Below, one piece after another: positions 14,855-41,717 of a stretch of DNA of 64,000 nt. A program made the translations under genes and the position numbers. The notes under the pieces are model-generated. The model saw nothing but the letters and a program-made list of their open reading frames with translations. It was not told the DNA's origin and did not search any database. Positions within the stretch are counted from its first letter, which is position 1; every line of letters starts with the position of its first letter. The DNA lies in IMG/VR virus record IMGVR_UViG_3300045921_000730, positions 124,001-188,000 of that record. The stretch is one strand, 5' to 3'.

Positions 14855-16471
14855 TCACTTCAGCATTAAAATCCACTTTCCGTTACCGCAGTCCCAAATT
14901 CTATCATACCCGTTATTTTTCATATTTTCCCATTCGGTGAGATTATTGTCAAAATAATCCAACAAATTACGTTGCTTGTGCTTTTGAAAATATATTCGCG
15001 AATATAGTTTGTGACAATTTTTACGTGAAAAATAAAAATAGTTAGGTTTTGTGTTCTCCACAAACGTAAACCCAGTTTTGTTATAAACGTTTCCGGTTGT
15101 ATAACGCAAATCATTGTAGGTTATAATACCTACTGGAAAAGTATTTTTTATGGCGTGTGTTAAAAGTTTTGAAAAACCACCAACAACTATATAATTTAAA
15201 AGAGAAGAAAAACGAACAATTTCCAACATTCCATCTTGTTTGTAACGATTTTTAGACAAAGAAAGCACTTGAACCAACGTGTTATCATAAAATAGCCCAT
15301 AATTATATTTTGATTTTACGCTACCGCCAAGATGGTTAGCTTCATGAAATATTTCAGCATCTTTTGTTGAAATTGTATTAATTTTACATTTTCTTGCATA
15401 CAAAATGTTTTTTGTTAACCCTAACGTATTCACGATAATAGATTTCACAATATTGGGTTGTTCCAAAATTTCTTTATCCCAAAAATGTAATAGTTTAATA
15501 TTTTTAGTTTTACATAAATTTGTTTTTTGCAAATGGTACGAAGCATTTTTTCCGTTTATTTCACTGTGCCAAAAAATACCATTAATTTCAATAGCTACAT
15601 TTGCAGAGGGAATAAAAATATCTAATTCTTTATTGTCTGGTAATATATCTCTCACATTCACTTGATGTTCGATATTGTTTTGTATTAAAAAATCGACAAT
15701 TATTTGTTGTGGTTTAGACTTAAAATGATGTTGAATATCAATATTAAATTCATTCATTCGTGCCCATATGAGGTGTTTGGACACACCCTTTTCTTCAGCA
15801 ATCTCACCAATAGTTTTTTGTAAAATTGTGTGCTGATATGATAACCATTCACTATTATTAATTTGTTGATCTTTATTTGTTTTGTTATGTTGTTCTTTAA
15901 TTTTTTGTCTTATAGCATCGTGCTGGGAACAATACTTAACACCGTATCTTTCTAAATTTGTCGTTTGTTGCTTTTGTTTGTTTTGTTCTATAAAACTTTC
16001 TTTGCTTCCGTAACGATTAATAATCGTTGCTTCTCTTTTTAGCTTAATTTGTTTTTTTGTTTCTTCAGATTGCTTTAATTTTGCTTCTTTTATTTTTTTA
16101 ATGAGATTGACTTTATCAGAAAGTCTCTTTTTAACTTTTTGTGCTTTAATGCTATTATCATTAGCAGCACACTTGCTGGAACAATATTGCTGAAACGATT
16201 TTTTCGAAGGTATGAAACGGAGCGGAACACTACATACTTTACAGGTTGGCTGTTGTGTAATATTTGAAATAATAACAAATATTCGTTCTTGTAAAGACGG
16301 TTCACCCTCCAAAAAACATGTATTATCAATAATTTGCTTAACTATATCTGGATATTTCCCCACAATCTTTGTAAGATTTGGGTTGATTCGGTGTTTATCA
16401 TTAATAAATTTATACTTTTGTAAAATTTCATTCATATAATTTCCACAAATAAACCTGGTGTTTTTTAACAT
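14855..16471 (-). CDS. Free-standing homing-endonuclease-like protein: Zn finger/HTH + PD-(D/E)xK (Vsr/DUF559-like) + Mom/GNAT-like domain (copy 1)
   Basis: CKVC...YCSSKC; ELDIFIPSANVAIEINGIFWHSE; YARKC...NHLGG...EIVRF...RIWDCG. Confidence 0.75.
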   Translation of the reverse strand: MLKNTRFICGNYMNEILQKYKFINDKHRINPNLTKIVGKYPDIVKQIIDNTCFLEGEPSLQERIFVIISNITQQPTCKVCSVPLRFIPSKKSFQQYCSSKCAANDNSIKAQKVKKRLSDKVNLIKKIKEAKLKQSEETKKQIKLKREATIINRYGSKESFIEQNKQKQQTTNLERYGVKYCSQHDAIRQKIKEQHNKTNKDQQINNSEWLSYQHTILQKTIGEIAEEKGVSKHLIWARMNEFNIDIQHHFKSKPQQIIVDFLIQNNIEHQVNVRDILPDNKELDIFIPSANVAIEINGIFWHSEINGKNASYHLQKTNLCKTKNIKLLHFWDKEILEQPNIVKSIIVNTLGLTKNILYARKCKINTISTKDAEIFHEANHLGGSVKSKYNYGLFYDNTLVQVLSLSKNRYKQDGMLEIVRFSSLLNYIVVGGFSKLLTHAIKNTFPVGIITYNDLRYTTGNVYNKTGFTFVENTKPNYFYFSRKNCHKLYSRIYFQKHKQRNLLDYFDNNLTEWENMKNNGYDRIWDCGNGKWILMLK

Positions 16472-16509
16472 TGTTCAATCGACATTTTCACGCAAAAAAC
16501 ACCATTCGC

Positions 16510-16517
16510 TATAAATA
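16510..16517 (+). promoter_or_regulatory. T4-type late promoter
   Basis: TATAAATA upstream of the protease gene. Confidence 0.7.
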
Positions 16518-16622
16518 TTATTATACAACAAAATACATTAATGTTATGATTGACTCATTTCTTCGAATGCAAGAACCGAAGCAGATGATAAACATTTAAA
16601 ACACACAAAGGAGTTAAAAATA

Positions 16623-17261
16623 ATGACTACTATACAACTTTTAACAGAAGAGTTGCTACCATCAGAATGCAGTCTGCTGCAAGAAACATCACAAGACGGA
16701 AAAAATATATGGCTGTCCGGCATATTTATGCAAGCTGACCTCAAAAATCGCAACGGACGTGTATATCCAATGAATGAAATTGCTTCAGCCGTTGAGACTG
16801 CTAAACAAAAAATTAAAGAGCAAAATGGTATCATGGGTGAATTGGATCACCCACAATCTCTTCAAATCAATCTTGATAGAGTATCACATGTTATTACTGA
16901 ACTTTGGATGAATGGTGCTAATGCATATGGTAAAGCCAGACTCCTTAACACACCAATGGGAAATATTGCACAAGAATTAGTTAAAAATGGTGTCAAGCTT
17001 GGCGTATCGAGTCGTGGTGCCGGCAATGTTAATGAAAGCGGTGGCGTATCTCAATTTCAATTTATTACAGTAGATATTGTAGCTCAGCCATCAGCACCAA
17101 ATGCGTATCCTACGTCAGTTTATGAATCTTTACAATTGTCGAAATCGGGCCACAACATCCAATCACTTGCTGAAGCAGCTCAACACGACAAAAAAGCTCA
17201 AGTGTTTCTTAAGAAAGAGATACTTAACTGGCTGAATTCTGCGATTTTTTCTAAAAAATAA
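16623..17261 (+). CDS. gp21: Prohead protease
   Basis: GIFMQAD.KNRNGRVYP, GELDHP, VSH, GVSSRGAG, DIVAQPSAPNAYP. Confidence 0.95.
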   Translation: MTTIQLLTEELLPSECSLLQETSQDGKNIWLSGIFMQADLKNRNGRVYPMNEIASAVETAKQKIKEQNGIMGELDHPQSLQINLDRVSHVITELWMNGANAYGKARLLNTPMGNIAQELVKNGVKLGVSSRGAGNVNESGGVSQFQFITVDIVAQPSAPNAYPTSVYESLQLSKSGHNIQSLAEAAQHDKKAQVFLKKEILNWLNSAIFSKK

Positions 17262-17293
17262 GAATTTTCTTGCGTAAATAACTCTTTGATTTT

Positions 17294-17336
17294 AAACAAG
17301 AAATTCCTTTGTTTTAGGGGAATTTCTTGTTTTTTT
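17294..17336 (+). terminator. Hairpin/terminator between protease and scaffold
   Basis: AAACAAGAAATTCC...GGAATTTCTTGTTTTTT. Confidence 0.55.
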
Positions 17337-17391
17337 ATATTATTTTAATAAATAATATTAATAAAAACCACCCTGTTATAGGAGAAATAAC

Positions 17392-18312: not shown

Positions 18313-18344
18313 AAAATTTTTGCTAGTACAAAAGGAGAAAAGCA

Positions 18345-19784
18345 ATGAATGAAATTTTTGAAAACTGGTCAGAAGTCAAGGAAACTCTTCTTGACGGTCT
18401 ATCAAAGCAACAAAAGGATATCGTAGGTCCACTACTTGAAAACCAGAAGAATTATCTTCTAACAGAAACAGCAGCTGCTGGTGCAGTTCAAGCACATGAC
18501 ATTGCTGGTTTCCGTAAGATCCTAATTCCAATGATCCGTCGTATTATTCCTGGCACAATTGCAACCGAAATCGTTGGTGTTCAGCCAATGCAAGGTCCAG
18601 TCGGCCTAGTATACACACTACGTTATCGTTACGGTGAAGGCGTCAACGTTCCTGCAGCAGGCACAGCAGGCAACCCATGGACACCAAACCCAATAGGCAA
18701 CTTCGGTAACATTACAGCAAACGATGAAATGTTCGGTAACAATCCCGTTCTACGTCAGTTCTATTCTGGCAATGCTGGCGCAGTAATTGGTGACGGTGGT
18801 GCAGCACAACCCGCTGGCGCATCCGGTATTACAAATGCTGCTGCTGATGAAGCAGACATTCAGTCAAATGCATCACGTGGTGCATGGCCATCAAGCATTC
18901 CAGCTTACAACACAGCTGCATTTGGTCCATATGGTCCAGACGCAATCGGCAAGACATACGCTGGCTCACTATACGGTGGCTCCGGTTCCTTTATTGAAGG
19001 TTCAGGTGGTCGTACAGTTAAGCTAGAAGTTGTATCACAAGCCGTTGAAGCAGCAACACGTAAGCTCCAAGCTGGTTGGACAATCGAAGCCATGCAAGAC
19101 CTTAAGGCACAACATGGTCTCGATCTAGAATCAGAGCTAACACAAGTTGTTTCTGCTGAAATCGTTCATGAAATCGACTCTGAAATTCTTTCAGACCTTC
19201 TAGCTCTTGCAGGCACAGTTGGCACATACGATTATGCAACAATCGGTCTTGGTCCAAACTATCAGCCAGCATACCTAGGCGATCGTTTTGCTAATCTTGG
19301 TGTTATTATCAATGCAGTAGCAAACGAAATTGCACGTAAGACACGTCGTGGTCCAGGTAACTTTATTGTTGTATCTCCAATGGTTGTTTCCGTCCTACAA
19401 TCTGCTGCTAAGTCAGTATTTGCACCAGCAGTTGCAGGTTCATTCAAGGGTCCAAACAACACAATGTTGGTTGGTACTTTGAACGGCACAATCAAGGTTT
19501 ACAGCTACTTGTGGAATCAAGTTTCTGGTTTAGCTGCTGCTCAAGACGATGTGATCCTAGTTGGTTACAAGGGTGGTAACGGTGAGACCGACACAGGTTA
19601 TTTCTACTGCCCATACATCCCATTGATGTCAAGCGGTGTTGTAATCAATCCAGTCACCTTCCAGCCTGTCGTTTCTATGATGACTCGTTATGGTAAGACT
19701 GCATTTACTCAAACACAAACATCTTTGGGTAATAGCGCTGACTACTATGGCAAGATAAATGTTCTAAATTTCCAATTTGCATAA
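18345..19784 (+). CDS. gp23: Major capsid protein
   Basis: IPMIRR...EIVGVQPMQGPVGLVYTLR, TRKLQAGWTIEAMQDL, FYCPYIPL, FQPVVSMMTRYG. Confidence 0.97.
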   Translation: MNEIFENWSEVKETLLDGLSKQQKDIVGPLLENQKNYLLTETAAAGAVQAHDIAGFRKILIPMIRRIIPGTIATEIVGVQPMQGPVGLVYTLRYRYGEGVNVPAAGTAGNPWTPNPIGNFGNITANDEMFGNNPVLRQFYSGNAGAVIGDGGAAQPAGASGITNAAADEADIQSNASRGAWPSSIPAYNTAAFGPYGPDAIGKTYAGSLYGGSGSFIEGSGGRTVKLEVVSQAVEAATRKLQAGWTIEAMQDLKAQHGLDLESELTQVVSAEIVHEIDSEILSDLLALAGTVGTYDYATIGLGPNYQPAYLGDRFANLGVIINAVANEIARKTRRGPGNFIVVSPMVVSVLQSAAKSVFAPAVAGSFKGPNNTMLVGTLNGTIKVYSYLWNQVSGLAAAQDDVILVGYKGGNGETDTGYFYCPYIPLMSSGVVINPVTFQPVVSMMTRYGKTAFTQTQTSLGNSADYYGKINVLNFQFA

Positions 19785-19797
19785 TTGCAAATTGCTT

Positions 19798-19826
19798 AAA
19801 AGCCCGCAGAAATGCGGGCTTTTTTT
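19798..19826 (+). terminator. Intrinsic terminator after the major capsid gene
   Basis: AAAAGCCCGCAGAAATGCGGGCTTTTTTT. Confidence 0.9.
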
Positions 19827-19871
19827 GGTTACTAGGTAATTCTATTGATTAATATGATGTTAACATATTAT

Positions 19872-19879
19872 TATAAATA
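19872..19879 (+). promoter_or_regulatory. T4-type late promoter
   Basis: TATAAATA upstream of ORF 19926. Confidence 0.65.
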
Positions 19880-19925
19880 CGTAGTATAGTTTAATGCACT
19901 TATTCTTTACAAAGGAAGAATTCAA

Positions 19926-21551
19926 ATGCCAAAAGTCGGTGAAATTGACACTAGTTACCCAACCCTTCTTGAAACAGAAAATAAAATCCAACTATTAGAA
20001 CCGTTTACAGGAGCAAAAAATTATCACCAAATGAAATGTCTGGTATGTAATCATATATGGTCAAGTACTCCTATATCAAAACGACAAACTTTTAAAAAAT
20101 ATGGTGTGAGTGGCTGTCCAGTATGTAATAAAAAATCAAAAGAAATAAAATATAAAGCACTTCGAGACAATATTCTATCACAATTGCGTAATGCTGGTCT
20201 TGAAATATTATCAGATTATGATGGTAGTCAAACAACCACTCAATTAGTTACCTTTAAAAATATTCATTGTGGACATGTATTTGATACATATCCTGGTAAT
20301 TTAATTCAATTTGAAAGTAAATGCACTGTCTGTGGTAAGCAAAAAAGAACTAAAAAAATCACAGCATGGTCAAAAGCTAATTCAGAAAAGTGGAAAAAAA
20401 CAGCATCTGCATGGCATATATACAAATCTGAAGTTGCTAAATTAACCGAACAGACATACAAAATGTACAAAGAAACAATCAATCCCAAAAATTTACCGCG
20501 TGGAAAAGCAGGTGTTCCTGGTGCTTATCATTTAGATCATATTGTACCTAAACGTTTCTGCTTTGATAATAATATACCCGCAGAAATATGTGCTAATAAA
20601 TCAAACCTTCAAATGATTGAATGGCACGAAAATGTTGGTATACGTAATCATATAAAAGGCATGATTCCACCTTTGTTTTTTTCATACATAACTTCTAACA
20701 CGAAATTAGAACAATATGCATGTCAGCTTAAAAATATTTTGCCAAATGCTCAACTATTTGTCAATATTGCGGATATTATGGTTACAGCATATGATCAACA
20801 AAGCAATTACGCAATAATTGTTTTACCTATCGATCAATCACATGCTGACTTGAAAAGTGGGTATGTAGCGTACAAAGCATTGACAGCTGCAAACGTAAAT
20901 TTCATTATTCTATTTGAAGACGAATTGACAAACATTCCTTTGTTATTTGCAAAACTTAAACATTATACTCATTCTAATCAATCTGCTCGAATTCATGCTC
21001 GTCAATGTGTTATTAAAAAATGTTCAAAAAAAGAAAAAAAGCAGTTATTAGATTTAAATCATATTCAAGGCAATGACAACTCGCAACTAGCTTATGGTGC
21101 TTACTATCAAGACAAACTGGTTGCAGTCATGACATTTTCGCGTCCACGAATCGCATTAGGACAAAAAAACAAACATCACGACGAAGGGAAATGGGAATTA
21201 AGTCGATTTTGTACAGACGTTCAATATAAAATTCCAGGAATTGCATCAAAACTTTTGACATATTTTAAACGCAATAACTATTGGACAGAAATCTATAGTT
21301 ATGCAGATAAGCGATGGAGTACAGGTAAAATGTACTATAAACTTGGATTTCGTTTAGCAACTGATAATCCACCTGATTATTTTTATGTTATCAATGGAAT
21401 TCGTAAACACAGATGGAATTATAGAAAAGATATTCTTAAACGCACGTTAGTTAATTATGATCCTTCTTTAACAGAATACCAAAATATGCAACGGTGTGGT
21501 TTTTATCGTGTGTGGGATTGTGGGACTTTTAAGTTTGTCATGCAAACTTAA
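19926..21551 (+). CDS. Homing-endonuclease-like protein: Zn ribbons + HNH + Mom/GNAT-like domain (copy 2)
   Basis: CLVCNH...GCPVC; YHLDHIVP...NLQMIEWHEN (HNH); IHARQC...NHIQG...WELSRF...SYADKRWS...RVWDCG. Confidence 0.75.
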   Translation: MPKVGEIDTSYPTLLETENKIQLLEPFTGAKNYHQMKCLVCNHIWSSTPISKRQTFKKYGVSGCPVCNKKSKEIKYKALRDNILSQLRNAGLEILSDYDGSQTTTQLVTFKNIHCGHVFDTYPGNLIQFESKCTVCGKQKRTKKITAWSKANSEKWKKTASAWHIYKSEVAKLTEQTYKMYKETINPKNLPRGKAGVPGAYHLDHIVPKRFCFDNNIPAEICANKSNLQMIEWHENVGIRNHIKGMIPPLFFSYITSNTKLEQYACQLKNILPNAQLFVNIADIMVTAYDQQSNYAIIVLPIDQSHADLKSGYVAYKALTAANVNFIILFEDELTNIPLLFAKLKHYTHSNQSARIHARQCVIKKCSKKEKKQLLDLNHIQGNDNSQLAYGAYYQDKLVAVMTFSRPRIALGQKNKHHDEGKWELSRFCTDVQYKIPGIASKLLTYFKRNNYWTEIYSYADKRWSTGKMYYKLGFRLATDNPPDYFYVINGIRKHRWNYRKDILKRTLVNYDPSLTEYQNMQRCGFYRVWDCGTFKFVMQT

Positions 21552-21688
21552 TTGAACTTTTAAAATAATAAGTGCTTCATATAAAACAAAGTAAAAGTGT
21601 ACATGGATATAAGGGCGGAAAGATTTAGAGTTGCCGTTTATACACAAACAAATATATAATACATGAACACAACACGAGAATGTAATAA

Positions 21689-23476
21689 ATGGCTGCTAAA
21701 AAATCTCACGATCAGTTTTTGATGGATTTACAAAAACGAAACAAATTAAATCCAGACAATCAAATTGAATTAATTTCAGGTCAACAATATACAGGTTTAG
21801 ACGAACCGTTGACATTTAAATGTCTTAATGGACACAGAAACTTTACAACGTTGCCTAGATATATTATCCAAAAACAATCAGGATGCCCCATATGTGGTGC
21901 AAAAAGAGCAGGTAATAAAAACATAAAAACAAACGAATCGTTTATTGATAAGTTAAATAAACGAAATATGATATATTCACCTGTAATGTTAGCACCTAGC
22001 GAACAATACAAAGGTGTGCATACAAAAATAGCATTTGTTTGTGGGAATCCTAAACATTCGTCGTGGTTAGCTACACCAGCTTCTATATTGCAAGGACACG
22101 GATGTCCTGAGTGCGGGAAAGAAAAAAGCAGACAAACTCACCAACACAACCATTCACAGTTTGTTGAATTGTTATTAAAAAGAAATGTAGAACATCCACA
22201 TAAAAAAGTATATCTAGCAGATGGTGAAATATATACCCAGCAAAACAGTAAGCTGAAATTTGCATGTGATAAAGGACACATTTGGTCAACTCTACCAGGA
22301 GATGTCATTCACAGAAAAATTGGTTGTCCCTTTTGTGCATCTTCAAAAACATTTTCGTTCATGGCTATAGAATGGCTTACACAGATTGAACGGAATGAAA
22401 ACATTACAATTATCCATCGTGGAAATTCAGATAAAGAATATGTGTTACCAGGTACCAAATATACTGTGGACGGATATTGTAAAGAAAACAACACCGTATA
22501 TGAATTTTATGGTAATTATTGGCACGGAAATCCTCGAATATACAAAAAAGAAGACATTAATGAGCGCGCCAAGATGACATTTGGTGAACTATATGACAAT
22601 ACAATTAAAAAGGAAAATGCAATTAAAGAAATGGGTTATAATCTAATAACAATATGGGAGGATGAATTTGATAACATCAAACAACAACAAACTCAAATTG
22701 ATAAGTTGAAAGAAATAACAAAAAACCTTTCGGTTGACGTTGTTGTTATGCCCATTGATAGACCATATGACCGGTTGTACTATGTTAATCAATTAAATAC
22801 TGCTATACACAATAATAAGCCAACCATTTTTATATTCAACGATGAGTTAAATAACATAGAACTTATTAGTAGTAAATTAAAACATTATAATAAAAGTAAT
22901 AATGCTACACGTATACACGCACGACAATGCGATATAGTTGAAATAACCAATAAACACAAAAAAGATTTTCTTGACAAGTATCATGTACAAGGTAATCATA
23001 ATGCTGAGATAGCATATGGTGCCTACTACAATGATAATCTTGTAGCTGTAATGACTTTTTGTAAGCCACGAATCGCATTAGGACAAAAAAACAAACAAAA
23101 CAATGAACAACGTTGGGAATTAAGTCGTTTTTGTACTGATGTTAATTATCGAATACCAGGAATTGCTTCAAAGTTATTAACATATTTTAAACGCAATTAT
23201 CATTGGGATGAAATTTATAGTTATGCAGACAGACGGTGGAGTGTTGGAAATTTATATGAAACTCTTGGATTTACGTTGGATAGAATAAATCCACCTGATT
23301 ATTTTTATGTTGTTAACGGAGTACGTAAACACAGATGGAATTACCGTAAAGACATTTTAAAAACAACACTACCAAATTATAATCCTAATTTGACAGAATA
23401 CCAAAATATGGTTAATCATGGATTCTGGCGTGTGTGGGATTGTGGGACCTTGCGTTATTCTTTAAAGAACATTTAA
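21689..23476 (+). CDS. Homing-endonuclease-like protein: three Zn-ribbon repeats + PD-(D/E)xK + Mom/GNAT-like domain (copy 3)
   Basis: Three C..H...GCPxC repeats; YTVDGYCKENNTVYEFYGNYWHG; C-terminal domain very similar to copy 2. Confidence 0.75.
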   Translation: MAAKKSHDQFLMDLQKRNKLNPDNQIELISGQQYTGLDEPLTFKCLNGHRNFTTLPRYIIQKQSGCPICGAKRAGNKNIKTNESFIDKLNKRNMIYSPVMLAPSEQYKGVHTKIAFVCGNPKHSSWLATPASILQGHGCPECGKEKSRQTHQHNHSQFVELLLKRNVEHPHKKVYLADGEIYTQQNSKLKFACDKGHIWSTLPGDVIHRKIGCPFCASSKTFSFMAIEWLTQIERNENITIIHRGNSDKEYVLPGTKYTVDGYCKENNTVYEFYGNYWHGNPRIYKKEDINERAKMTFGELYDNTIKKENAIKEMGYNLITIWEDEFDNIKQQQTQIDKLKEITKNLSVDVVVMPIDRPYDRLYYVNQLNTAIHNNKPTIFIFNDELNNIELISSKLKHYNKSNNATRIHARQCDIVEITNKHKKDFLDKYHVQGNHNAEIAYGAYYNDNLVAVMTFCKPRIALGQKNKQNNEQRWELSRFCTDVNYRIPGIASKLLTYFKRNYHWDEIYSYADRRWSVGNLYETLGFTLDRINPPDYFYVVNGVRKHRWNYRKDILKTTLPNYNPNLTEYQNMVNHGFWRVWDCGTLRYSLKNI

Positions 23477-23501
23477 ACACCAGGTTTTCTTCAATTGTTT
23501 G

Positions 23502-23509
23502 TATAAATA
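23502..23509 (+). promoter_or_regulatory. T4-type late promoter
   Basis: TATAAATA. Confidence 0.7.
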
Positions 23510-23540
23510 TTGTTACCAATTAATTTTATTATCTGTATAA

Positions 23541-23876
23541 ATGAAATTAACATTTAAACAATATCTTGAAAGCAAAAACCAATTAATTGAGGCTGTTCAA
23601 CGTGTGCCACGTTCTATTTCAAAATATAGAATAAAAAAATATTGTACGTTTGTTGTTGGTGAAAGCGAAGTTGAAAAAAATATCTTATCTCTGAAACCAA
23701 ACCAGCACTTGGAAATAGAATGGATTTATGAAAATATACATAAACCAACACGAGGATATATAAAATTAATTGACAATAATGTTCTTGAAGAAGAGCTTGT
23801 AACATTTTGGGATGATAAAAAAATAACAAAATGGTTACAACGATACACAGTTAAACTTAACAACACAGGTCATTAA
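23541..23876 (+). CDS. Hypothetical late protein with a capsid-targeting-like N-terminus
   Basis: MKLTFKQYLESK; late promoter upstream. Confidence 0.65.
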   Translation: MKLTFKQYLESKNQLIEAVQRVPRSISKYRIKKYCTFVVGESEVEKNILSLKPNQHLEIEWIYENIHKPTRGYIKLIDNNVLEEELVTFWDDKKITKWLQRYTVKLNNTGH

Positions 23877-23888
23877 AAGGAGAAAAAA

Positions 23889-33817: not shown

Positions 33818-33837
33818 TTCTTAATTTAAACATAATG

Positions 33838-35349
33838 TTATTTTAATACACCCTCTTCGGAGGGTGTTTCTTTTTGCCATATCCACCGTATATTACCACA
33901 ATCCCAAATTCTATCATATCCATTATTTTTCATATTTTCCCACTCAGATAATGCCGGATCGTATATTTCTAATAATTTTTTTAATTTATGTTTTTGAAAT
34001 TGAATTCGTGAAAATGTTATATTTGTGTTTTGAGTGTGAAAATATATATAGTTTGGTGGTGTATATCGGTCTATTTTAAAACCAAGATGTTCATAGAAAT
34101 TAGTAATACCCCATTTGTTTTCTGAATATGTTACAATTGATTTTATGTTTTTGAGTTGTGTTGTTGCAAATGTAAAAAGTTTAGATGCACCACCCACAAC
34201 GTTGTGATCTCTTTCAACAGCATAACGTGTTAGTTCATATTGTACATTTTTATCATAACGTGATACAGAAAAACTCATGCACGCAACAACTTTTCCACTG
34301 TAAACCAAACCATAATTGTATTTTGAAGGTACATATCCTTGTGTATGATTTTTTTCATAAAAAGTTTTTATATCTTTTGTTTGTAAGGACACAACTTCAC
34401 ATTTTCGCGCATAAATGTTGTTTATATTTTTTGTTTTATTTGTTTTATGTAACAAACGAGACAATATCAATTCTTTATTTTTAATCCAGTCATATTCGAA
34501 TATATGAATCAATGTTATACCTTGTTTATGACAAAGTGTGGTTTTGTTTAGATGGTAATATCTATTTTTTCCTTTTGTTTCACTGTGCCAAAATGTTCCG
34601 TTGAATTCTATTGCTATTTTATGGTCGGGAAGATATAGATCAACATGATACGGTGAAATAATTTTTTTATTTTCTTCAAACGTTATATCATTGTTTTTGA
34701 GAAAATTACATATTTCTTTTTGGGGTTCGGAAGTAAAGGATTGTCGTTTTGTTTTTAATTGTTTTTTTGATAGCAAAGAAGAAATGCGTGGCTGTGTAAT
34801 GCCCAGCACTTCACCGAGCTCTTTTTGTGAAAGTCCTTGCTCGATCAGCTCTTCGACCAAAACGTTGTTTGCATTTTTGTTTCGTGTTCTGAAATTACTT
34901 TTACTGATTTTTTCTTTTATATCTTGCGATTTTGATGGGTTATCAACGCCATATTTTTCTAACCAACGTTGTTGAATATTTTGTTTTATTTTAGAATTAT
35001 TCATAGCACATTTAACACCATAACGTTCAACGTTTGTTTTTTGGATTTGGACGTTGATATCATTATCTTGTCTTGCACATTTTGAACAACAATATGTGTT
35101 ATATGTGCTTTTTTCTTTTCTCCAAGTAACATGATTGTTATTACATATTTTACATTTAGGTACATAAAATATGTTATTTTCAACATGCCATATTCTTGTA
35201 ACAATGTGAGCATATGCGGGAAGAAAAGCAGTGGCTTCGAGTAAATTACTATAACCTTCGTGATATTTTAACGAACTTTTCTTTTTCATTTTTTTGCTTT
35301 GTTCTATCAACATCTGAAGTTTTTTATCCATTTTAAGCCTTTGTAGCAT
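33838..35349 (-). CDS. Homing-endonuclease-like protein: Zn finger/HTH + PD-(D/E)xK + Mom/GNAT-like domain (copy 4)
   Basis: CKIC...YCCSKC; ERYGV repeats; HTH SQKELGEVLGITQPRIS; VDLYLPDHKIAIEFNGTFWHSE; RIWDCG. Confidence 0.75.
   Translation of the reverse strand: MLQRLKMDKKLQMLIEQSKKMKKKSSLKYHEGYSNLLEATAFLPAYAHIVTRIWHVENNIFYVPKCKICNNNHVTWRKEKSTYNTYCCSKCARQDNDINVQIQKTNVERYGVKCAMNNSKIKQNIQQRWLEKYGVDNPSKSQDIKEKISKSNFRTRNKNANNVLVEELIEQGLSQKELGEVLGITQPRISSLLSKKQLKTKRQSFTSEPQKEICNFLKNNDITFEENKKIISPYHVDLYLPDHKIAIEFNGTFWHSETKGKNRYYHLNKTTLCHKQGITLIHIFEYDWIKNKELILSRLLHKTNKTKNINNIYARKCEVVSLQTKDIKTFYEKNHTQGYVPSKYNYGLVYSGKVVACMSFSVSRYDKNVQYELTRYAVERDHNVVGGASKLFTFATTQLKNIKSIVTYSENKWGITNFYEHLGFKIDRYTPPNYIYFHTQNTNITFSRIQFQKHKLKKLLEIYDPALSEWENMKNNGYDRIWDCGNIRWIWQKETPSEEGVLK
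33848..33875 (+). terminator. Sheath-gene terminator with a cUUCGg tetraloop
   Basis: ACACCCTC-TTCG-GAGGGTGT-TTCTTTTT. Confidence 0.8.
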
Positions 35350-35401
35350 AAATACTTTTAAAGAATTATTTTGTTTATATTATACGGGGAGTATTTATAC
35401 T

Positions 35402-35989: not shown

Positions 35990-36005
35990 TTGTACATTAA
36001 AAATT

Positions 36006-36110
36006 CAAGGAAATCTGATACTCTTTAGACGTCAGGATCAATTGAATAAATACAAAAGTAGGGAACACAGCCCAGGAAGTTAGTTGTTTTTACGACAACT
36101 AACAGTTCAC
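36006..36110 (+). repeat. Paired IS200/IS605-end-like remnants (A then B) flanking a late promoter
   Basis: CAAGGAAATCTGATACTCTTTAGACGTCAGG...AATAAATA...GCCCAGGAAGTTAGTTGTTTTTACGACAACTAACAGTTCAC; same order as upstream of the portal gene. Confidence 0.55.
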
Positions 36111-36131
36111 TATATTTCCTGAGAAGAAACT

Positions 36132-37619
36132 ATGGCAAATGATCCACGTTTTAATGTAAAACCATGTCCTCCAACAGTAGGCGGGAGGTCTGTTGCAGAA
36201 AATGTCGCTTCTACAGCGTCCCGTGCTAATTTTTTTAGAGGCATTCAAAAAGCTGGAAATCTCGAAGTTTTAAATGACATAGGTGCTAATAACATTGGTA
36301 GAGGATTACGAACAATAGCAAGCGTTTCCAATTCTATTAGAACGGGATGTGGTGCTTTGCCGTCCTCAATAGGAAATTCTGTACAGGCAGGAACAAACTG
36401 GGTGTTAGAACAGGTAGGTATGAACGCTACAGTAGCCGAATCTGTTAGAGCATTCAATCCACAGGTTGCAAATCAGGCGCTTGGTCAAGCGAGACAAATA
36501 TTTGAAAAAACACAACAAGGAAATTTTAAAATAGAAGATATACCGTTTGTTTTTCAAGATTTGCAAAATCTTGAAAGACTAGGTCGAGGAATTTTTACAC
36601 CCTCGTCGTGGCTTGAAAGAAATAAAGCAACAGCAGTTTGTGAAGCATCGCCATATGCAATCGATCTTGTACGTCAGCACCCTAAGTTTAAGTTTTTGTT
36701 TGTTGTTGAATTTGGTTTTTATCCTGAGTTTGATTCTCTCAAACAAGTACAATTTCCGTTTTTAATCAAAAAAACAACACGACCTTCTATAAAATATGAA
36801 ATGGAAGATATAAATTATTATAATTATCGAACTAAACTAATTACAAAAACCACATTTGATGAAATGCAAATGTCATTTCACGATGACGGACGAAACGAAA
36901 CAATGGATTTTATTACAGCATACTTAAGAGCACTAACACCAATAGCAAACAAGTTCTCGAATGTAATAAACAACGGAAGTTTTAATTCTTCTGAATATAT
37001 GTACGATGGTATATATCCAGGATATTCTGGGAATGCTGATTCCACATATGGACCAAACATTCAAACAACAATCGACGAAGCAGGACAACCCTTAAATGTA
37101 ACAACTAATGATGTACAGCAAGGAAAAAATTTTCAAATACCTATTCAAAATTATTCCTCAACGAGAGGCTTGACAGGTAATTCAATTGGCGTTTTACAAT
37201 ATATTAATCTTTATCATTTTTATGATTGGGGTAGAAAACTGAATAGTTATTCTTTTATCAATCCAAGAATTTCAAATATAAGCATGGATGAACTTGATAT
37301 GAGTGCATCCGAAAGTTTATCTGAAATAACAATTTCTTTTAATTATGATACAGTAATCATTGACACAGGTATTGATTTTGAGACGCTTGAAGGAAGAGTC
37401 ACGTCTCTTCAAGAAGCAGGTATCTATAAACTTAGAAATGTTAGTAGTAAAGAGAAAAACACATCGTCGCCCGATGTACCTTTTGGTCTTGCTACACCAC
37501 CCAATCCAGCAGAATGTAATCCGGCAAACACACAACGAGGTAACCAGCCGGTTGGAACCGCACGATCGTTATCAGGAATTGGTTCTACACCGTTTGGACC
37601 ATCATTATTCAGATCATGA
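36132..37619 (+). CDS. Tube-fold baseplate-tube junction protein (gp54/gp48-like)
   Basis: PKFKFLFVVEF, RPSIKYEMEDINYYN, FHDD, FINPRI...DELDMS...ITISFNYD: paralogous to the tube protein. Confidence 0.65.
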   Translation: MANDPRFNVKPCPPTVGGRSVAENVASTASRANFFRGIQKAGNLEVLNDIGANNIGRGLRTIASVSNSIRTGCGALPSSIGNSVQAGTNWVLEQVGMNATVAESVRAFNPQVANQALGQARQIFEKTQQGNFKIEDIPFVFQDLQNLERLGRGIFTPSSWLERNKATAVCEASPYAIDLVRQHPKFKFLFVVEFGFYPEFDSLKQVQFPFLIKKTTRPSIKYEMEDINYYNYRTKLITKTTFDEMQMSFHDDGRNETMDFITAYLRALTPIANKFSNVINNGSFNSSEYMYDGIYPGYSGNADSTYGPNIQTTIDEAGQPLNVTTNDVQQGKNFQIPIQNYSSTRGLTGNSIGVLQYINLYHFYDWGRKLNSYSFINPRISNISMDELDMSASESLSEITISFNYDTVIIDTGIDFETLEGRVTSLQEAGIYKLRNVSSKEKNTSSPDVPFGLATPPNPAECNPANTQRGNQPVGTARSLSGIGSTPFGPSLFRS

Positions 37620-38053: not shown

Positions 38054-38055
38054 AA

Positions 38056-39215: not shown

Positions 39216-39252
39216 ACTGTCGCCTAACATAAATGAAGTAGCTTCCTGGGCC
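39212..39252 (-). repeat. IS200/IS605-end-like remnant (family B, copy 3)
   Basis: Minus strand reads GGCCCAGGAAGCTACTTCATTTATGTTAGGCGACAGTTCAC; overlaps the TGA of the upstream ORF. Confidence 0.55.
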
Positions 39253-39328
39253 AGATCTATAAACGAAATCATATCTTCGCAGCCATTATTTTGAACAATC
39301 TCTGTGATATACAGAAAACAATAAAGCC

Positions 39329-40258
39329 ATGGCAAAATCAAAAAATCCTTATCTTAAAAAAGCCAACGAACAACACGAGTACACAAATCAGCAAGTTTTA
39401 GAATTAATGAAATGTGCTGACGATCCTATTCATTTTATTACTAATTATGTTGTTATTGAACATCCTGTAAAAGGTGCCATTAAGTTTGATATGTACCCAT
39501 ATCAAAAACGAATAATTAGAGCATTTAAAGATAACAGACAAGTAATTGTTTTGTCAGCAAGACAAACAGGTAAAAGTATTTCATCAGCAGCTTATTTGCT
39601 TTGGTTTGCTTGTTTTCATTTTGATAAAACTATTCTTATAGCATCAAACAAAAACGACAATGCTATGGAAATGATTCACAGAATTCGTTTTATGTATGAA
39701 AGACTGCCTCATTGGTTAAAACCAGGTATCACCGAAGACGGATGGAATAAACATAGTGTGGGGTTTGATAATGGTTCGAGAATAATTTCGCAAGCAACCT
39801 CTGAAACAACAGGTCGTGGTATGTCAATATCTCTATTGTTTTTAGATGAGTTCGCTTTTGTTAGAGAAACAATTCAAGAAGAATTTTGGACTTCGGTTGC
39901 ACCAACTTTAGCAACAGGTGGTAGTTGTATTATCACATCAACACCGAATGGTGATACAAACAGATTTGCTCAACTCTGGAGAGGTGCGTGCGTAAAAGCA
40001 AACGATAACGGATTTGTTCCCATTGAAGTAAAATGGAATGAACCACCGGGACGAGACGAAAAATTTAAACAAAAAGAGATGGCAAAGATAGGTGAAACCC
40101 GATGGAAACAAGAATACGAATGTTGCTCCATAAATACAAAAGTAGAGATAATGGATGAGAATAATAATATACTTTGTTTAACTATTGGAGAACTTTATAA
40201 TGTTTTATCAACAAATAGCGAGAGATCTGACACAAAAATATGTAACATCTCCAATTGA
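39329..40258 (+). CDS. gp17: Terminase large subunit, N-terminal ATPase extein + split-intein N fragment
   Basis: ARQTGKS Walker A, LLFLDEFAF Walker B, TSTPNG; ends QEYE|CCSINTKV...TIGELY. Confidence 0.92.
   Translation: MAKSKNPYLKKANEQHEYTNQQVLELMKCADDPIHFITNYVVIEHPVKGAIKFDMYPYQKRIIRAFKDNRQVIVLSARQTGKSISSAAYLLWFACFHFDKTILIASNKNDNAMEMIHRIRFMYERLPHWLKPGITEDGWNKHSVGFDNGSRIISQATSETTGRGMSISLLFLDEFAFVRETIQEEFWTSVAPTLATGGSCIITSTPNGDTNRFAQLWRGACVKANDNGFVPIEVKWNEPPGRDEKFKQKEMAKIGETRWKQEYECCSINTKVEIMDENNNILCLTIGELYNVLSTNSERSDTKICNISN
40121..40258 (+). mobile_element. Split intein N fragment (45 aa)
   Basis: Block A CCSINTKVEI followed by TIGELY, then stop. Confidence 0.85.
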
Positions 40259-41717
40259 CGGGAAACAATATTGTCGTAAAAATGGAGAATTTTTACGACA
40301 CATACGACAACACGAATTTGATAACTATCAATCTTTTTTTGAACACTATTATCCTTCACTAATACAATACTGTCCGGTGTGTAACAAAAAATGTACTTTT
40401 TTACCCTCAAAAATGACATATCGCAAAACTTGTGGGTCAAAAAGTTGTGCAAATCAAATATCTTCAAACGTAAAACAAGGATTCACAGAAGAACAGAAAC
40501 AAATTCGAACTGAACGATACCGACAATCAATGTCATTAAAGACAAAGAAACAAATAGAGGAAATATCCACTAAGCGAAAAAGCACATATGTTTTAAAATA
40601 TGGTGTTGATCATCCTTGGAAATCTTCGCAGGTAAGAGAAAAAATTCAACTCACAATGGAAAAAAAGTATGGACACAGGAACTTCAGTTCAACTCTGATT
40701 CCTCCTGAGAGTAAAATACTTTTGGAAAATCGTGAGTGGCTTTACACCAAACACGTATTAGAACAAACTCCGCTATATGTAATTGCCAAACAACTGAACG
40801 TTGGAGATAGAACTGTAGGTGTTTACCTACATAACCACAACATCAAAACACACAATTTTCAATCTGCACAATGGGAAAAAGAATTAGAAGATTTCTTAAA
40901 AGAACATAATGTTCAATTTCAACGAAACGCAAGAGATATCATTCCTCCAAAAGAATTAGATTTTTATATTCCAAAATTTAATTTGGCAATCGAGTTGTGT
41001 GGTTTATATTGGCATAGCGATGCGAAAGAAAGAATCACCAAACATTATCATGAACACAAATACAAAGAATGCCAACAACAAAATATTAGATTATTAACAA
41101 TATTTGAAGACGAGTGGGAAAGAAAACATGTTATTTTTTCTAAAATTAAACATTTGATACGTGCAACAACAAGCAAGTGTTATGCTCGGAATTTGCAAGT
41201 TGTCAGTGATATTTCTAAGACTGAAAGAAATAATTTTTTTGAAAAAACACATATACAGGGAGATGGTAAGGGTAGTATTTGTATAGGATTACGAAATGCC
41301 AACCAGGTACTTGTTGCACTAGGATTATTTTCAAAACAATCCAACCAAAAAGATACTTATGTTCTTGAAAGATATTCTACCTGTGAACACGTCGTTGGTG
41401 GATTCAGCAAAATCATTTCTGCGTTTGAAAAACTTACAAATTGCAAAAAAATAATAACATTTGCTGACAAACGTTGGAGTAACGGTGAACTATATTTAAA
41501 AACAAATTTTTATAAAGATAAAGACCTTCCAATAGATTATGCATACGTAGTAAATAATAAACGAATACATAAATTTAATTTCAGACACAAACATCTAAAG
41601 AAACGTTTGAACAACTACGATCCGTCACTATCCGAATCACAAAATTGTAATTTGCATGGAATATATAGGATATGGGACTGTGGGAAAATTCGATTTGTTC
41701 GTGAGAGGAAATTATGA
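40200..41717 (+). CDS. Homing-endonuclease-like protein between the intein halves: Zn finger/HTH + PD-(D/E)xK + Mom/GNAT-like domain (copy 5)
   Basis: GGAG SD before ATG 40200; CPVC...TCGSKSC; ELDFYIPKFNLAIELCGLYWHSD; FADKRWSNG; RIWDCG. Confidence 0.8.
   Translation: MFYQQIARDLTQKYVTSPIDGKQYCRKNGEFLRHIRQHEFDNYQSFFEHYYPSLIQYCPVCNKKCTFLPSKMTYRKTCGSKSCANQISSNVKQGFTEEQKQIRTERYRQSMSLKTKKQIEEISTKRKSTYVLKYGVDHPWKSSQVREKIQLTMEKKYGHRNFSSTLIPPESKILLENREWLYTKHVLEQTPLYVIAKQLNVGDRTVGVYLHNHNIKTHNFQSAQWEKELEDFLKEHNVQFQRNARDIIPPKELDFYIPKFNLAIELCGLYWHSDAKERITKHYHEHKYKECQQQNIRLLTIFEDEWERKHVIFSKIKHLIRATTSKCYARNLQVVSDISKTERNNFFEKTHIQGDGKGSICIGLRNANQVLVALGLFSKQSNQKDTYVLERYSTCEHVVGGFSKIISAFEKLTNCKKIITFADKRWSNGELYLKTNFYKDKDLPIDYAYVVNNKRIHKFNFRHKHLKKRLNNYDPSLSESQNCNLHGIYRIWDCGKIRFVRERKL

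What the first reader, a model, noticed from the sequence alone, without database searches (positions are those of the whole stretch)
14855..41717. Five-member family: interchangeable nuclease modules fused to a conserved Mom/GNAT-like domain, inserted among core virion genes
Seen: ORFs 14855(-), 19926(+), 21689(+), 33838(-) and 40200(+) share a C-terminal domain of about 190 aa (YAR.C...NH.QG...YG...LV.VM.F...EL.RF...G..SKL...SYAD.RWS.G..Y...GF...R(I/V)WDCG). Their N-termini differ: Zn finger + HTH + PD-(D/E)xK in three, Zn ribbons + HNH in one, triple Zn ribbon + another PD-(D/E)xK in one. Sites: portal/protease, after the capsid gene (x2), sheath/tube, inside terminase. Known: free-standing homing endonucleases sit beside conserved T4-like genes; the NH, ELxR, S(F/Y)AD and GxxY...F motifs recall phage Mu Mom, a GNAT-fold DNA adenine modifier. 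Inference: the constant part is the putative modifier rather than the nuclease, suggesting a selfish cut-and-protect element that marks its own genome and cleaves unmarked competitors, or a reader of modified DNA.
Basis: partly seen in the sequence, partly recalled or inferred. Interest (0 to 1): 0.8.

Follow-up and report, generated by a model that had tools for sequence, protein, structure and literature searches.

The report
Hef-type homing endonucleases with Mom-like domain
Five selfish 'homing endonuclease' genes of an already described, very common phage family sit between the virion genes of an uncultured hot-spring jumbo phage. Each carries a C-terminal domain related to the phage Mu DNA-modifying enzyme Mom, whose role in these proteins has never been tested.

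Summary
Five ORFs (m1-m5) share a ~185-aa C-terminal domain (pairwise E 1e-19 to 1e-102), and there is no sixth copy in the window. All claimed insertion sites are correct.

The domain is a GNAT whose closest relative is phage Mu Mom:
- hhalign against a Mom-family profile gives 93.5% probability.
- Foldseek of a pLDDT-94 model puts Mom (8BV8) first.
- Five of the six Mom active-site positions examined are 92-99% conserved.
- None of the five passes Pfam's Mom cut-off alone, so they form a sister subfamily.

The proteins are Hef-like homing endonucleases. The canonical core is a Vsr-like (I-Bth0305I type) nuclease plus the Mom-like domain. m2 and m3 keep a degenerate nuclease remnant and have gained an upstream HNH or a second Vsr-like nuclease.

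Mobility is directly supported. Relatives have empty, single or double slots, and a co-occurring near-identical phage lacks exactly the 1,776-bp m2 cassette.

The family is huge (more than 20,000 cluster representatives). The fusion and the cut-and-protect idea were published in 2021. These are new members of a known kind, and the function of the Mom-like domain remains open.

The parts
14855..16471 (-). m1, a Hef-like homing endonuclease gene (538 aa). Layout: Zn/DUF7487 repeats, Vsr-like nuclease (about 15422-15709), Mom-like C-domain (14858-15406). Lies between o14365 and the prohead protease.
   Evidence: GC 0.292 against 0.364 for the neighbours. This slot is empty in all retrieved relatives.
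19828..21603 (+). The m2 cassette: the exact 1,776-bp block that is absent from a co-occurring, near-identical phage. It holds an AT-rich leader with TATAAATA at 19872 and the m2 gene (19926-21551).
   Evidence: read laying: a 12,969-bp contig of run X6 joins 19827 to 21604 with 8 other letters in between. Sequence.
19926..21551 (+). m2 (541 aa). Layout: three zinc ribbons, an HNH-like unit (about 20508-20645, YHLDHIVPK...NLQMIEWHEN), a degenerate Vsr-like fold lacking the catalytic D/E/H (about 20694-20969), and the Mom-like C-domain (20976-21548).
   Evidence: Foldseek of the aa 1-350 model: best hit 3R3P I-Bth0305I, E 0.016, TM 0.64 on the target. Most same-site genes in relatives keep the HNH motif.
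21689..23476 (+). m3 (595 aa). Layout: treble-clef zinc ribbons, a complete Vsr-like nuclease (about 22361-22723), a second truncated nuclease remnant (about 22769-22888), and the Mom-like C-domain (22910-23473).
   Evidence: The AF2 model of the C-domain has pLDDT 94, and Foldseek puts Mom 8BV8 first.
33838..35349 (-). m4 (503 aa). Layout: DUF7487 repeats, HTH, Vsr-like nuclease (about 34435-34743), Mom-like C-domain (33841-34419) with Glu and Lys at the Mom D149 and R151 positions. Lies between sheath and tube.
   Evidence: (MTES_1575, HTH_3, DUF7487). The sheath-tube gap is 29-60 bp in most relatives.
40200..41717 (+). m5 (505 aa from ATG 40200, with GGAG at 40187-40190; 510 aa from TTG 40185). 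Layout: Zn/DUF7487, Vsr-like nuclease (about 40857-41159), Mom-like C-domain (41175-41714; the most diverged of the five). Lies between the two split-intein halves of the large terminase.
   Evidence: The start overlaps the end of the terminase N-piece, and the stop overlaps the start of the C-piece (ATGA).
39329..40120 (+). Large terminase N-extein (ATPase domain, aa 1-264, ending ...WKQEYE).
   Evidence: (Terminase_6N).
40121..40255 (+). Split-intein N-fragment (45 aa, CCSINTKVEIMDENNNILCLTIGELYN...), fused to the terminase N-piece.
   Evidence: The same sequence type occurs in L110.
41714..42046 (+). Split-intein C-fragment (111 aa: block B VTDTHTFF, block F ETFDIVESETHTFFANG, block G LLCHN).
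   Evidence: Intein_splicing, sub-threshold; gp41-1 intein 6QAZ, E 2.8e-8, query aa 14-111 on intein positions 29-128.
42047..42793 (+). Large terminase C-extein (RNaseH-like nuclease domain), starting with the +1 Cys (CEFLSSDPLLID...).
   Evidence: (Terminase_6C). Joining the two exteins gives QEYE-CEF, as in the contiguous TerL of L083.
19800..19827 (+). Intrinsic terminator of the capsid gene (gcccgc-agaaat-gcgggc plus a T-run). The m2 cassette begins at the next base.

Best explanation
The five genes are free-standing homing endonuclease genes of the Hef-like family, resident in an uncultured T4-like jumbo phage from hot-spring microbial mats.

Each protein combines three parts: sequence-reading modules (zinc ribbons, DUF7487 repeats, HTH), a DNA-cutting module, and a C-terminal GNAT domain that is a diverged sister of phage Mu Mom. 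The cutting module is the family's Vsr-like / I-Bth0305I-type nuclease in m1, m3, m4 and m5, and probably an acquired HNH in m2.

Shown here: the homology, the domain architectures, the precise intergenic insertion next to conserved virion genes, presence/absence polymorphism among relatives and within one population, site-faithful lineages alongside intragenomic spread, and the split-intein setting of m5.

Inferred mechanism, step 1. During co-infection the enzyme cuts the element-free allele at or near the empty slot. Recombinational repair then copies the cassette in; the phage encodes gp46/47-like SbcCD. This is what was reported for Hef of phage U5.

Inferred mechanism, step 2. Because Mom's active-site residues and the GNAT cofactor loop are almost invariant across the family, the C-domain most likely still binds an acyl donor and a flipped-out adenine. 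It would act on the same DNA site as the nuclease. The most probable role is to acylate it, so that the resident genome is immune to its own enzyme, as in a single-chain restriction-modification enzyme. At the least it would serve as the base-flipping recognition module.

The donor (acyl-CoA or aminoacyl-tRNA) and the product are unknown.
For: Family and nuclease:
- PHROGs gives full-length matches to phrog_3339 'homing endonuclease' for m1, m4 and m5 (E 3e-98 to 3e-114), and phrog_559 is the best hit for m2 and m3 (E 1e-73 and 8e-98).
- tblastn finds 418 phage records annotated Hef-like, F-Lim or nuclease/acetyltransferase.
- The family profile hits the I-Bth0305I catalytic domain 3R3P at E 2.5e-7.
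- The literature places Hef in the Vsr-like family and reports that hef cleaves nrdB.

Mom relation:
- Close homologs and 32 of 72 representatives pass or hit Pfam Mom.
- hhalign against the Mom family gives 93.5%, E 2.3e-7.
- Foldseek top hit is 8BV8 at E 2e-8.
- The Mom H58, R111, D149, R151 and Y159 equivalents are 92-99% conserved, and the motif A Gly is 100% conserved.
- An insertion between beta6 and beta7 with conserved basic residues parallels Mom's essential insertion.

Mobility:
- Slots are empty, single or double in relatives.
- Run X6 holds an m2-free allele with exact boundaries.
- GC is lower than in the neighbours.
- The after-MCP clade is shared with other phages, m1 and m4 are sisters, and the L076 copies form an intragenomic clade.
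- Split or frameshifted copies occur elsewhere.
- The m5 arrangement equals the published fractured-gene arrangement.
Against: - No cleavage, homing or modification was measured for any of these proteins. The primary Hef paper could not be read.
- Homing endonucleases normally need no protective modification, because insertion disrupts or alters the target. Here too the m2 insertion replaces 8 nt at the junction.
- None of the five C-domains passes Pfam's Mom gathering score alone.
- Mom's essential S124 aligns to a variable position in the hhalign register. It aligns to a conserved Ser only in an alternative register.
- m4 has Glu and Lys at the D149 and R151 positions.
- The T4-type Hef-like gene of phage N2 has Asn at the D149 position.
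- The conserved residues could be kept for binding a flipped base, not for catalysis.
Confidence: 0.55

Rival explanations
1. The genes are homing endonucleases, but the Mom-like domain no longer catalyses anything. It is an exapted DNA-binding or base-flipping module (or a dimerisation module) that gives the nuclease its target specificity. Immunity of the resident genome comes simply from disruption or divergence of the target.
For: - Free-standing homing endonucleases generally work this way, from established knowledge of the Seg and Mob enzymes (reviewed in PMC2988022).
- The m2 insertion replaces the junction sequence.
- Mom S124 is not conserved in the hhalign register.
- m4 carries Glu and Lys, and the T4-type Hef of phage N2 carries Asn, at Mom-essential positions.
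- None of the five passes the Pfam Mom cut-off.
- Mom's R111, D149 and R151 surround the flipped adenine in the published model, so they could be conserved for binding.
Against: A binding-only domain would not be expected to keep the GNAT cofactor loop (Gly 100%, Ala 88%) and all five active-site equivalents at 92-99% across representatives that are less than 50% identical to each other.
Confidence: 0.3
2. Each protein is a phage-borne restriction-modification-like conflict system, not a homing element. The Mom-like domains mark the phage genome globally at short motifs (anti-restriction and self-marking). The nuclease domains degrade unmarked host or competitor DNA. This is the reading published for jumbo phages.
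For: - Iyer et al. 2021 propose exactly this and note five such genes in phage PA5oct.
- Multiple diverged copies per genome are common: 10-11 in Campylobacter CP81-type phages and 5 in Lak phages.
- The active-site residues are conserved.
Against: The genes are precisely inserted cassettes with sporadic presence or absence next to conserved genes. They include site-faithful lineages and a copy between split-intein halves. They are dispensable in close relatives and even within one population. That is the signature of selfish homing elements, not of a maintained defence function. Long sequence-reading N-terminal modules suggest rare, long targets.
Confidence: 0.12
3. The GNAT domain acts on something other than DNA. 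It might acylate a tRNA, an aminoacyl-tRNA or a host protein, as GNAT toxins and the phage Rac-type acetyltransferase do. Its fusion to nucleases would then be a delivery or regulatory arrangement.
For: After Mom, the structural neighbours are ordinary acetyl-CoA protein and small-molecule acetyltransferases with nearly equal scores. The family keeps a more canonical CoA-type motif A than Mom does.
Against: The nearest relative by profile and by structure is the DNA-modifying Mom. The Mom-specific residues R111 and R151, absent from general GNATs, are conserved. The domain is fused to DNA-binding and DNA-cutting modules in the large majority of representatives examined.
Confidence: 0.03

Closest known systems
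Hef of T-even-type phage U5 and the 'Hef-like' homing endonucleases (F-LimIII, VII, VIII and X of Dickeya phage LIMEstone1; Campylobacter CP81-type phages; T4-like coliphages such as N2)
   Same: Full-length homology (phrog_3339; tblastn E down to 1e-59). The genes are free-standing and sit next to conserved genes, including tail tube and capsid neighbours. Many copies occur per genome. The Hef-like gene of phage N2 between nrdA and nrdB has the same C-domain (hhalign 100%).
   Different: These are new, diverged copies (under 40% identity to any GenBank phage protein) in an uncultured hot-spring jumbo phage. m2 and m3 carry an added nuclease upstream of a degenerate core. One copy lies in a split intein. 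The C-domain was not discussed in the Hef literature I could read.
Vsr-like (EDxHD) homing endonuclease family, I-Bth0305I (PDB 3R3P)
   Same: The family profile matches its catalytic domain (E 2.5e-7). The conserved D, E, WH and (F/W)ED motifs are present in m1, m3, m4 and m5. The degenerate region of m2 still gives 3R3P as its best structural hit, though weakly (E 0.016, TM 0.64 on the target). Taylor et al. 2011 already include Hef-type enzymes.
   Different: I-Bth0305I is intron-encoded, uses NUMOD/HTH modules and has no GNAT domain.
Mom of phage Mu (PDB 8BV8; Pfam PF25680), a Gly-tRNA-dependent adenine N6 modifier
   Same: GNAT fold and best structural hit. Profile-profile probability is 93.5%. 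Equivalents of H58, R111, D149, R151 and Y159 are conserved, and there is an insertion between beta6 and beta7.
   Different: About 15% identity. The five score below Pfam's Mom cut-off when scanned alone. S124 and Y59 are not clearly conserved. Motif A is more CoA-like. The domain is fused to nucleases, where Mom is a stand-alone late protein under Com control. Activity, donor and product are unknown.
Mom-REase fusions of jumbo phages, predicted as 'momylation' restriction-modification systems (Iyer, Anantharaman, Krishnan, Burroughs, Aravind 2021)
   Same: The same domain fusion, the same phage class and multiple copies per genome.
   Different: That work treats them as conflict systems and does not discuss homing. 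The data here (cassette indels, site-faithful lineages, intein setting) show selfish mobility.
[quoted passage not shown] 2009), including the atypically split terminase intein
   Same: m5 lies between an intein N-fragment fused to the TerL ATPase piece and a C-fragment fused to the nuclease piece. The break point is early (about 28 residues in), as reported for the terminase case. A relative (L110) has the split intein without the endonuclease gene, like one gp41 locus in that paper.
   Different: The intervening endonuclease here also carries the Mom-like domain. In the passages of that paper retrieved by term search, the words acetyltransferase and C-terminal domain do not occur.
Single-chain Type IIG/IIC restriction-modification enzymes (for example MmeI); this is an analogy from my own knowledge, not tested here
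   Same: One polypeptide would read a site, then either modify an adenine or cut. This is the way the cut-and-protect model would work.
   Different: Those enzymes use SAM methyltransferase domains, not a GNAT, and are cellular defence genes, not homing elements. No homology is implied.

Membership tests
Hef-like homing endonucleases | Sequence homology to annotated or characterised Hef-type proteins over the nuclease plus C-domain core | tested here: met
   phrog_3339 E 3e-98 to 3e-114 for m1, m4 and m5; phrog_559 is the best hit for m2 and m3. tblastn finds Hef-like and F-Lim annotated genes. The Hef-like gene of phage N2 matches the C-domain profile at 100%.
Hef-like homing endonucleases | Free-standing gene in an intergenic slot beside conserved genes, sporadically present among related genomes | tested here: met
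   An m2-free allele exists in the same sample.
Hef-like homing endonucleases | Site-specific cleavage of the element-free allele and unidirectional transfer in mixed infection | not testable with these tools
   Only reported in the literature for U5 Hef. The primary paper is not held.
Vsr-like / EDxHD nuclease family (I-Bth0305I) | Homology to the I-Bth0305I / Vsr catalytic domain with the conserved acidic and His residues | tested here: met
   Family profile against 3R3P, E 2.5e-7. The ELD, AIE, WH(S/G) and (F/W)ED motifs are present in m1, m3, m4 and m5. In m2 only the fold remains, and in m3 the second copy is truncated.
HNH (His-Me finger) nucleases, for m2 only | beta-beta-alpha metal finger with the catalytic His and Asn residues | tested here: inconclusive
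   The motif YHLDHIVPK...NLQMIEWHEN has D204, H205 and N227 invariant in 10 same-site genes. Pfam HNH_4 gives only E 0.028. Atlas neighbours include HNH families. Foldseek of the model gave no HNH hit.
Mom family (Pfam PF25680) | GNAT fold with Mom as the nearest relative | tested here: met
   AF2 model pLDDT 94. Foldseek: 8BV8 first at E 2e-8, TM 0.60/0.52. hhalign against the Mom-family profile: 93.5%.
Mom family (Pfam PF25680) | Score above Pfam's curated gathering threshold (27.1 bits) | tested here: not met
   C-domains alone: m2 24.9, m1 17.8 and m5 15.2 bits; m3 and m4 hit generic GNAT models best. Close homologs (P0006, P0012, P0072) do pass the 27.1-bit cut-off, and 32 of 72 representatives hit the model at E <= 0.001. 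So this is a sister subfamily at the border of the model.
Mom family (Pfam PF25680) | Active-site residues H58, R111, D149, R151 and Y159 (mutants are dead or strongly impaired in Mom) | tested here: met
   The aligned columns are H 99%, R 99%, D 97%, R 92% and Y 99% in 159 domains. They are present in m1, m2, m3 and m5; m4 has Glu and Lys at the D149 and R151 positions.
Mom family (Pfam PF25680) | Essential Ser124 at the start of helix alpha3 | tested here: inconclusive
   hhalign puts S124 on a variable column (T 30%, Y 22%, F 21%). An alternative register with equal spacing (SRAISY against SKLLTY) puts it on a Ser that is 74% conserved, at the start of the modelled alpha3. No coordinates were available for a residue-level superposition.
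Mom family (Pfam PF25680) | Essential HTH-like insertion between beta6 and beta7 | tested here: inconclusive
   The model has a 40-residue insertion (a hairpin plus three helices, aa 128-170) at that place, with R139, R142 and K147 82-96% conserved. hhalign did not align this part, so equivalence to Mom's insertion is topological only.
Mom family (Pfam PF25680) | Gly-tRNA(Gly)-dependent transfer to N6 of adenine in double-stranded DNA | not testable with these tools
   The biochemistry is described in PMC13219725. There are no data for Hef-type domains.
Split-intein 'fractured gene' (for the m5 locus) | Intein blocks A, B, F and G divided over two ORFs, nucleophile residues at the junctions, exteins that join to the uninterrupted host protein, and an endonuclease gene in between | tested here: met
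   Cys1 (CCSINT...), TxxH (TDTH), block F, HN plus the +1 Cys. QEYE|CEF equals the contiguous TerL of L083. The C-fragment matches gp41-1 intein 6QAZ at E 2.8e-8. The Pfam Intein_splicing hit is sub-threshold. Trans-splicing itself was not tested.
Group I intron with an endonuclease ORF (considered for the split terminase) | A recognisable group I intron RNA around the ORF | tested here: not met
   No Rfam family reaches its gathering score anywhere in the window. The ORFs overlap one another.

The most novel reading that the evidence does not exclude
The Mom-like domain of Hef-type endonucleases is an active DNA-adenine acyltransferase, using acyl-CoA or, like Mom, a charged tRNA. It marks the very site its fused nuclease would cut. 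Each element would then be a single-chain 'homing restriction-modification' unit with epigenetic self-immunity. A phage carrying five to eleven of them would bear several different rare, site-specific hypermodified adenines.
Probability: 0.25. Interest if true: 0.75.

Novelty: new member of a known kind. Interest (0 to 1): 0.33.

Why it matters
As found, this is ordinary: five more members of a family with over 20,000 sequence clusters, whose domain fusion and whose fractured-gene setting are both published.

Its value is as a well-documented natural example in three respects:
- An exact element-free allele is available in the same population, which gives a ready substrate for cleavage mapping.
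- Nuclease replacement has occurred on a conserved scaffold made of a nuclease remnant plus the Mom-like domain.
- One copy is nested in an atypically split terminase intein.

The open question it points to is real: why does one of the commonest phage homing endonuclease families carry a Mom-type GNAT with an intact-looking active site? The question has become testable now that Mom's chemistry and structure are known.

Tried and rejected
- **Sixth copy:** a six-frame HMM scan found none in the window.
- **Close GenBank relative of the phage:** megablast of 22 kb found nothing.
- **Group I intron or in-frame intein containing m5:** there are no Rfam hits, and m5 is in a different frame from both terminase pieces, so it is a separate gene between split-intein halves.
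- **Stand-alone C-domain proteins as evidence that the domain works alone:** the two examined are preceded by or overlap a DUF7487 N-terminal gene, so they are split or frameshifted copies.
- **m2 and m3 as a recent tandem duplication:** rejected, because m2 is closer to same-site genes of other phages.
- **Single-sequence PDB and NCBIfam searches of the m2 and m3 N-termini:** uninformative.
- **ESM Atlas:** gave only leads.
- **Fold search for the HNH unit of m2:** failed to confirm it.
- **TATAAATA late-promoter motifs upstream of m2 and m4:** noted, but the count of 10 in the window is about what I estimate by hand for chance from base composition, so no claim is made.
- **Primary sources:** the Hef paper (Sandegren et al. 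2005) and Iyer et al. 2009 are not held in the library.
- **Residue-level structural superposition on 8BV8:** not possible, because model coordinates are not exposed.

Full report
**1. The observation**

The window is part of IMG/VR contig UViG_3300045921_000730 (244 kb; L033, L082 and L120 are 100% identical). Public runs that hold it are hot-spring and microbial-mat metagenomes. No GenBank phage is close at the DNA level.

The five ORFs exist as described and share a 180-193-aa C-terminal domain. Pairwise identity is 32-70%, with E values from 8e-19 to 2e-102. A six-frame HMM scan finds exactly five copies in 64 kb.

The neighbours are portal, prohead protease, major capsid protein, sheath, tube and the two pieces of the large terminase. 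The window also encodes a gp55-like late sigma factor, gp47/46-like SbcD/SbcC and many virion proteins. This is a T4-like jumbo myovirus.

**2. What the proteins are**

PHROGs covers m1, m4 and m5 end to end with phrog_3339 'homing endonuclease', and all five match phrog_559 'HNH endonuclease', which is the best hit for m2 and m3. tblastn finds relatives in 418 phage records, annotated as Hef-like homing endonuclease, F-LimIII/VII, or nuclease/acetyltransferase. Some genomes hold many copies: 10-11 in Campylobacter CP81-type phages and 5 in Lak phages.

The LIMEstone paper defines the 'Hef-like' group and lists copies next to the tail tube and other conserved genes. A review states that U5 hef cleaves nrdB. 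The Hef-like gene of the Tequatrovirus N2 lies between nrdA and nrdB and has the same C-domain (hhalign 100%).

A profile of 72 full-length family members hits the catalytic domain of I-Bth0305I (3R3P) at E 2.5e-7. This agrees with Taylor et al. 2011, who placed Hef-type enzymes in the Vsr-like family.

An exhaustive profile search finds 20,229 cluster representatives (11,399 at E <= 1e-30). Among the best 149 the median length is 563 aa, and the domain is almost always at the C-terminus. The N-terminal parts mix DUF7487, MTES_1575 REase, treble-clef and C2H2 zinc fingers and HTH.

**3. Architectures of the five**

Alignment to the family profile shows the following:
- m1, m4 and m5 are canonical: sequence-reading modules, a Vsr-like nuclease with its conserved D, E, WH and acidic motifs, then the C-domain.
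- m3 has a complete Vsr-like nuclease, followed by a second copy reduced to its last third, then the C-domain.
- m2 has zinc ribbons and an insertion of about 100 aa with an HNH-type motif. Its core residues (D204, H205, N227) are invariant in nine same-site genes of relatives. A region follows that has lost the Vsr catalytic residues. Its model still gives I-Bth0305I as the best structural hit, though only weakly (E 0.016, TM 0.64 on the target).

Those two look like replacements of a decayed resident nuclease. Family-wide, the constant unit is the nuclease plus the C-domain.

**4. The C-domain and Mom**

The evidence for a Mom relationship is as follows:
- PHROGs gives Mom-like hits for m2 and m3.
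- Close homologs (about 50% identical to m3) pass Pfam's curated Mom family PF25680, and 32 of 72 representatives hit it at E <= 0.001.
- A 71-sequence profile of the domain, compared with a 31-sequence Mom-family profile, gives 93.5% probability at E 2.3e-7.
- An AlphaFold2 model (pLDDT 94, pTM 0.83) has the GNAT topology.
- Foldseek ranks the Mom crystal structure 8BV8 first (E 2e-8), ahead of ordinary acetyl-CoA GNATs.

The Mom residues shown by mutagenesis to matter are H58, R111, D149, R151 and Y159. They align to columns that are 99, 99, 97, 92 and 99% conserved in 159 domains. The GNAT motif A glycine is invariant.

There are caveats:
- Scanned alone, none of the five reaches Pfam's Mom cut-off.
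- Y59 is not conserved.
- S124 falls on a variable column in the hhalign register. It falls on a 74%-conserved Ser in an equally spaced alternative register that fits its description as 'a serine in alpha3'.
- m4 has Glu and Lys at the D149 and R151 positions.
- The N2 Hef has Asn at the D149 position.

The family is therefore best called a diverged sister of Mom, with an active site that looks intact in most members.

**5. Evidence that they are mobile**

Across relatives with 64-90% identical capsid proteins, the slot after the capsid gene is empty in some (110-150 bp to the next gene) and holds one or two copies in others. The sheath-tube gap is 29-60 bp in most relatives. In five phages it is 1.5-3.2 kb, with copies in either orientation. 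The portal-protease copy is unique to this phage. The five genes have GC 0.29-0.32, against 0.36 for their neighbours.

The most direct evidence comes from run X6, which is from the same sample as the probable source. A 12,969-bp contig at depth 16.5 matches 19183-19827 with one difference, skips 19828-21603 with 8 other letters in their place, and continues through m3 with 33 differences. The missing block starts at the base after the T-run of the capsid gene's terminator and contains only m2 with its own leader. The slot also separates a near-identical left flank from a 1.6%-diverged right flank.

A tree of 37 C-domains shows two patterns. An after-capsid clade (support 90/91) holds m2 and m3 together with the same-site genes of other phages, and m2 is nearer to those than to m3. 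There is also intragenomic spread: m1 and m4 are sisters, the four copies in L076 form one clade at different sites, and m5 groups with copies at other sites.

'Stand-alone' domain genes in metagenomes are split or frameshifted copies, which fits decay of selfish elements.

**6. The terminase copy**

In most relatives the large terminase is one gene (532 aa in L083). Here the N-piece ends ...WKQEYE followed by CCSINTKVEIMD.... The C-piece begins with 111 residues containing TDTH, ETFDIVESETHTFFANG and LLCHN, followed by CEFLSSDPLLID.

Removing these two parts restores the QEYE-CEF sequence of the contiguous protein exactly. The C-fragment matches solved inteins: gp41-1 intein at E 2.8e-8, with query residues 14-111 on intein positions 29-128.

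This is therefore a naturally split intein broken after about 28 residues. m5 lies between the halves, overlapping both neighbours.

It reproduces the 'fractured gene' arrangement of Dassa et al. 2009. That paper lists terminase as a host and singles out its intein as the one with an unusual break point. L110 has the same split intein with no endonuclease gene, and also a second, contiguous intein in the Walker A region.

**7. Mechanism and its status**

Shown: homology, architecture, insertion pattern, polymorphism and the intein setting.

Inferred from the family's known behaviour: cleavage of the empty allele and copying by recombinational repair.

Inferred from conservation only: that the C-domain is catalytically active on DNA and provides self-immunity or target reading. 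The cut-and-protect idea was already published for Mom-REase fusions in jumbo phages. The alternative, that the domain is a non-catalytic base-flipping reader, cannot be excluded. The substitutions in m4 and in the N2 Hef favour that alternative.

**8. Verdict**

These are new members of a known kind. The most interesting open point is the untested function of a Mom-type GNAT in one of the commonest phage homing endonuclease families.

Noticed in passing
window 40121-40255 and 41714-42046: The large terminase is a split-intein 'fractured gene'. A 45-aa intein N-fragment is fused to the ATPase piece, and a 111-aa C-fragment is fused to the nuclease piece, with m5 in between.
   Followed up: yes
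L110:4927-7847: A relative has the same split terminase intein with no endonuclease gene between the two ORFs, which overlap by 7 nt. It also has a second, contiguous intein of about 275 aa in the Walker A region (SARQTGK|ALALNT...VPTHN|STVSAAY).
   Followed up: partly
window 19183-23600 (run X6 contig): In the m2-free allele the left flank (end of the capsid gene) differs at 1 of 645 positions, and the right flank (m3) at 33 of 1,997. The endonuclease slot therefore marks a boundary of genetic exchange.
   Followed up: partly
window 21893-22863 (run X5 contigs): Another hot-spring run holds the capsid gene and m2 nearly identical, but an m3 variant about 10% diverged (69 differences in 672 bases). 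That is mosaicism around the elements.
   Followed up: no
window 19872 (+) and 35399 (-): The T4-type late-promoter motif TATAAATA lies about 45-50 nt upstream of the m2 and m4 start codons, and the window encodes a gp55-like late sigma factor (4339-5043). However, the 10 occurrences in the window are about what I estimate by hand for chance from base composition.
   Followed up: partly
window 5048-7893: gp47/gp46-like SbcD and SbcC recombination nuclease genes. This is the machinery that processes double-strand breaks during homing in T4.
   Followed up: no
window 36132-37619: A 495-aa protein with a tail-tube-like domain lies directly after the tube gene. It may be a second tube-related protein.
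   Followed up: no
window 47259-62111: Four very large virion proteins (881, 1471, 1138 and 1016 aa). Three of them (all but the 1471-aa one) share the same head-decoration / fibre-like domain (phrog_2647, phrog_27782).
   Followed up: no
L200:1709-3301 (Escherichia phage N2): The T4-type Hef-like gene between nrdA and nrdB has Asn where Mom has the essential D149 (SYGNRRW). This hints that catalysis by the C-domain may be dispensable in that lineage.
   Followed up: partly
L198:2953-4591 and L199:659-1957: Apparent stand-alone C-domain genes are preceded by or overlap a DUF7487 N-terminal gene, so they are split or frameshifted family members. In L198 a separate small ordinary GNAT gene lies just upstream.
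   Followed up: partly
proteins P0241, P0242, P0243, P0249, P0273: Some database proteins of 830-1040 aa contain two complete copies of the C-domain. They are presumably tandem elements read as one gene, or true fusions.
   Followed up: no
window 42000-46000: A low-GC stretch (0.30-0.33) after the terminase holds several small genes on both strands. The two minus-strand ORFs scanned (43841-44443 and 45078-45659) have no PHROG match.
   Followed up: no
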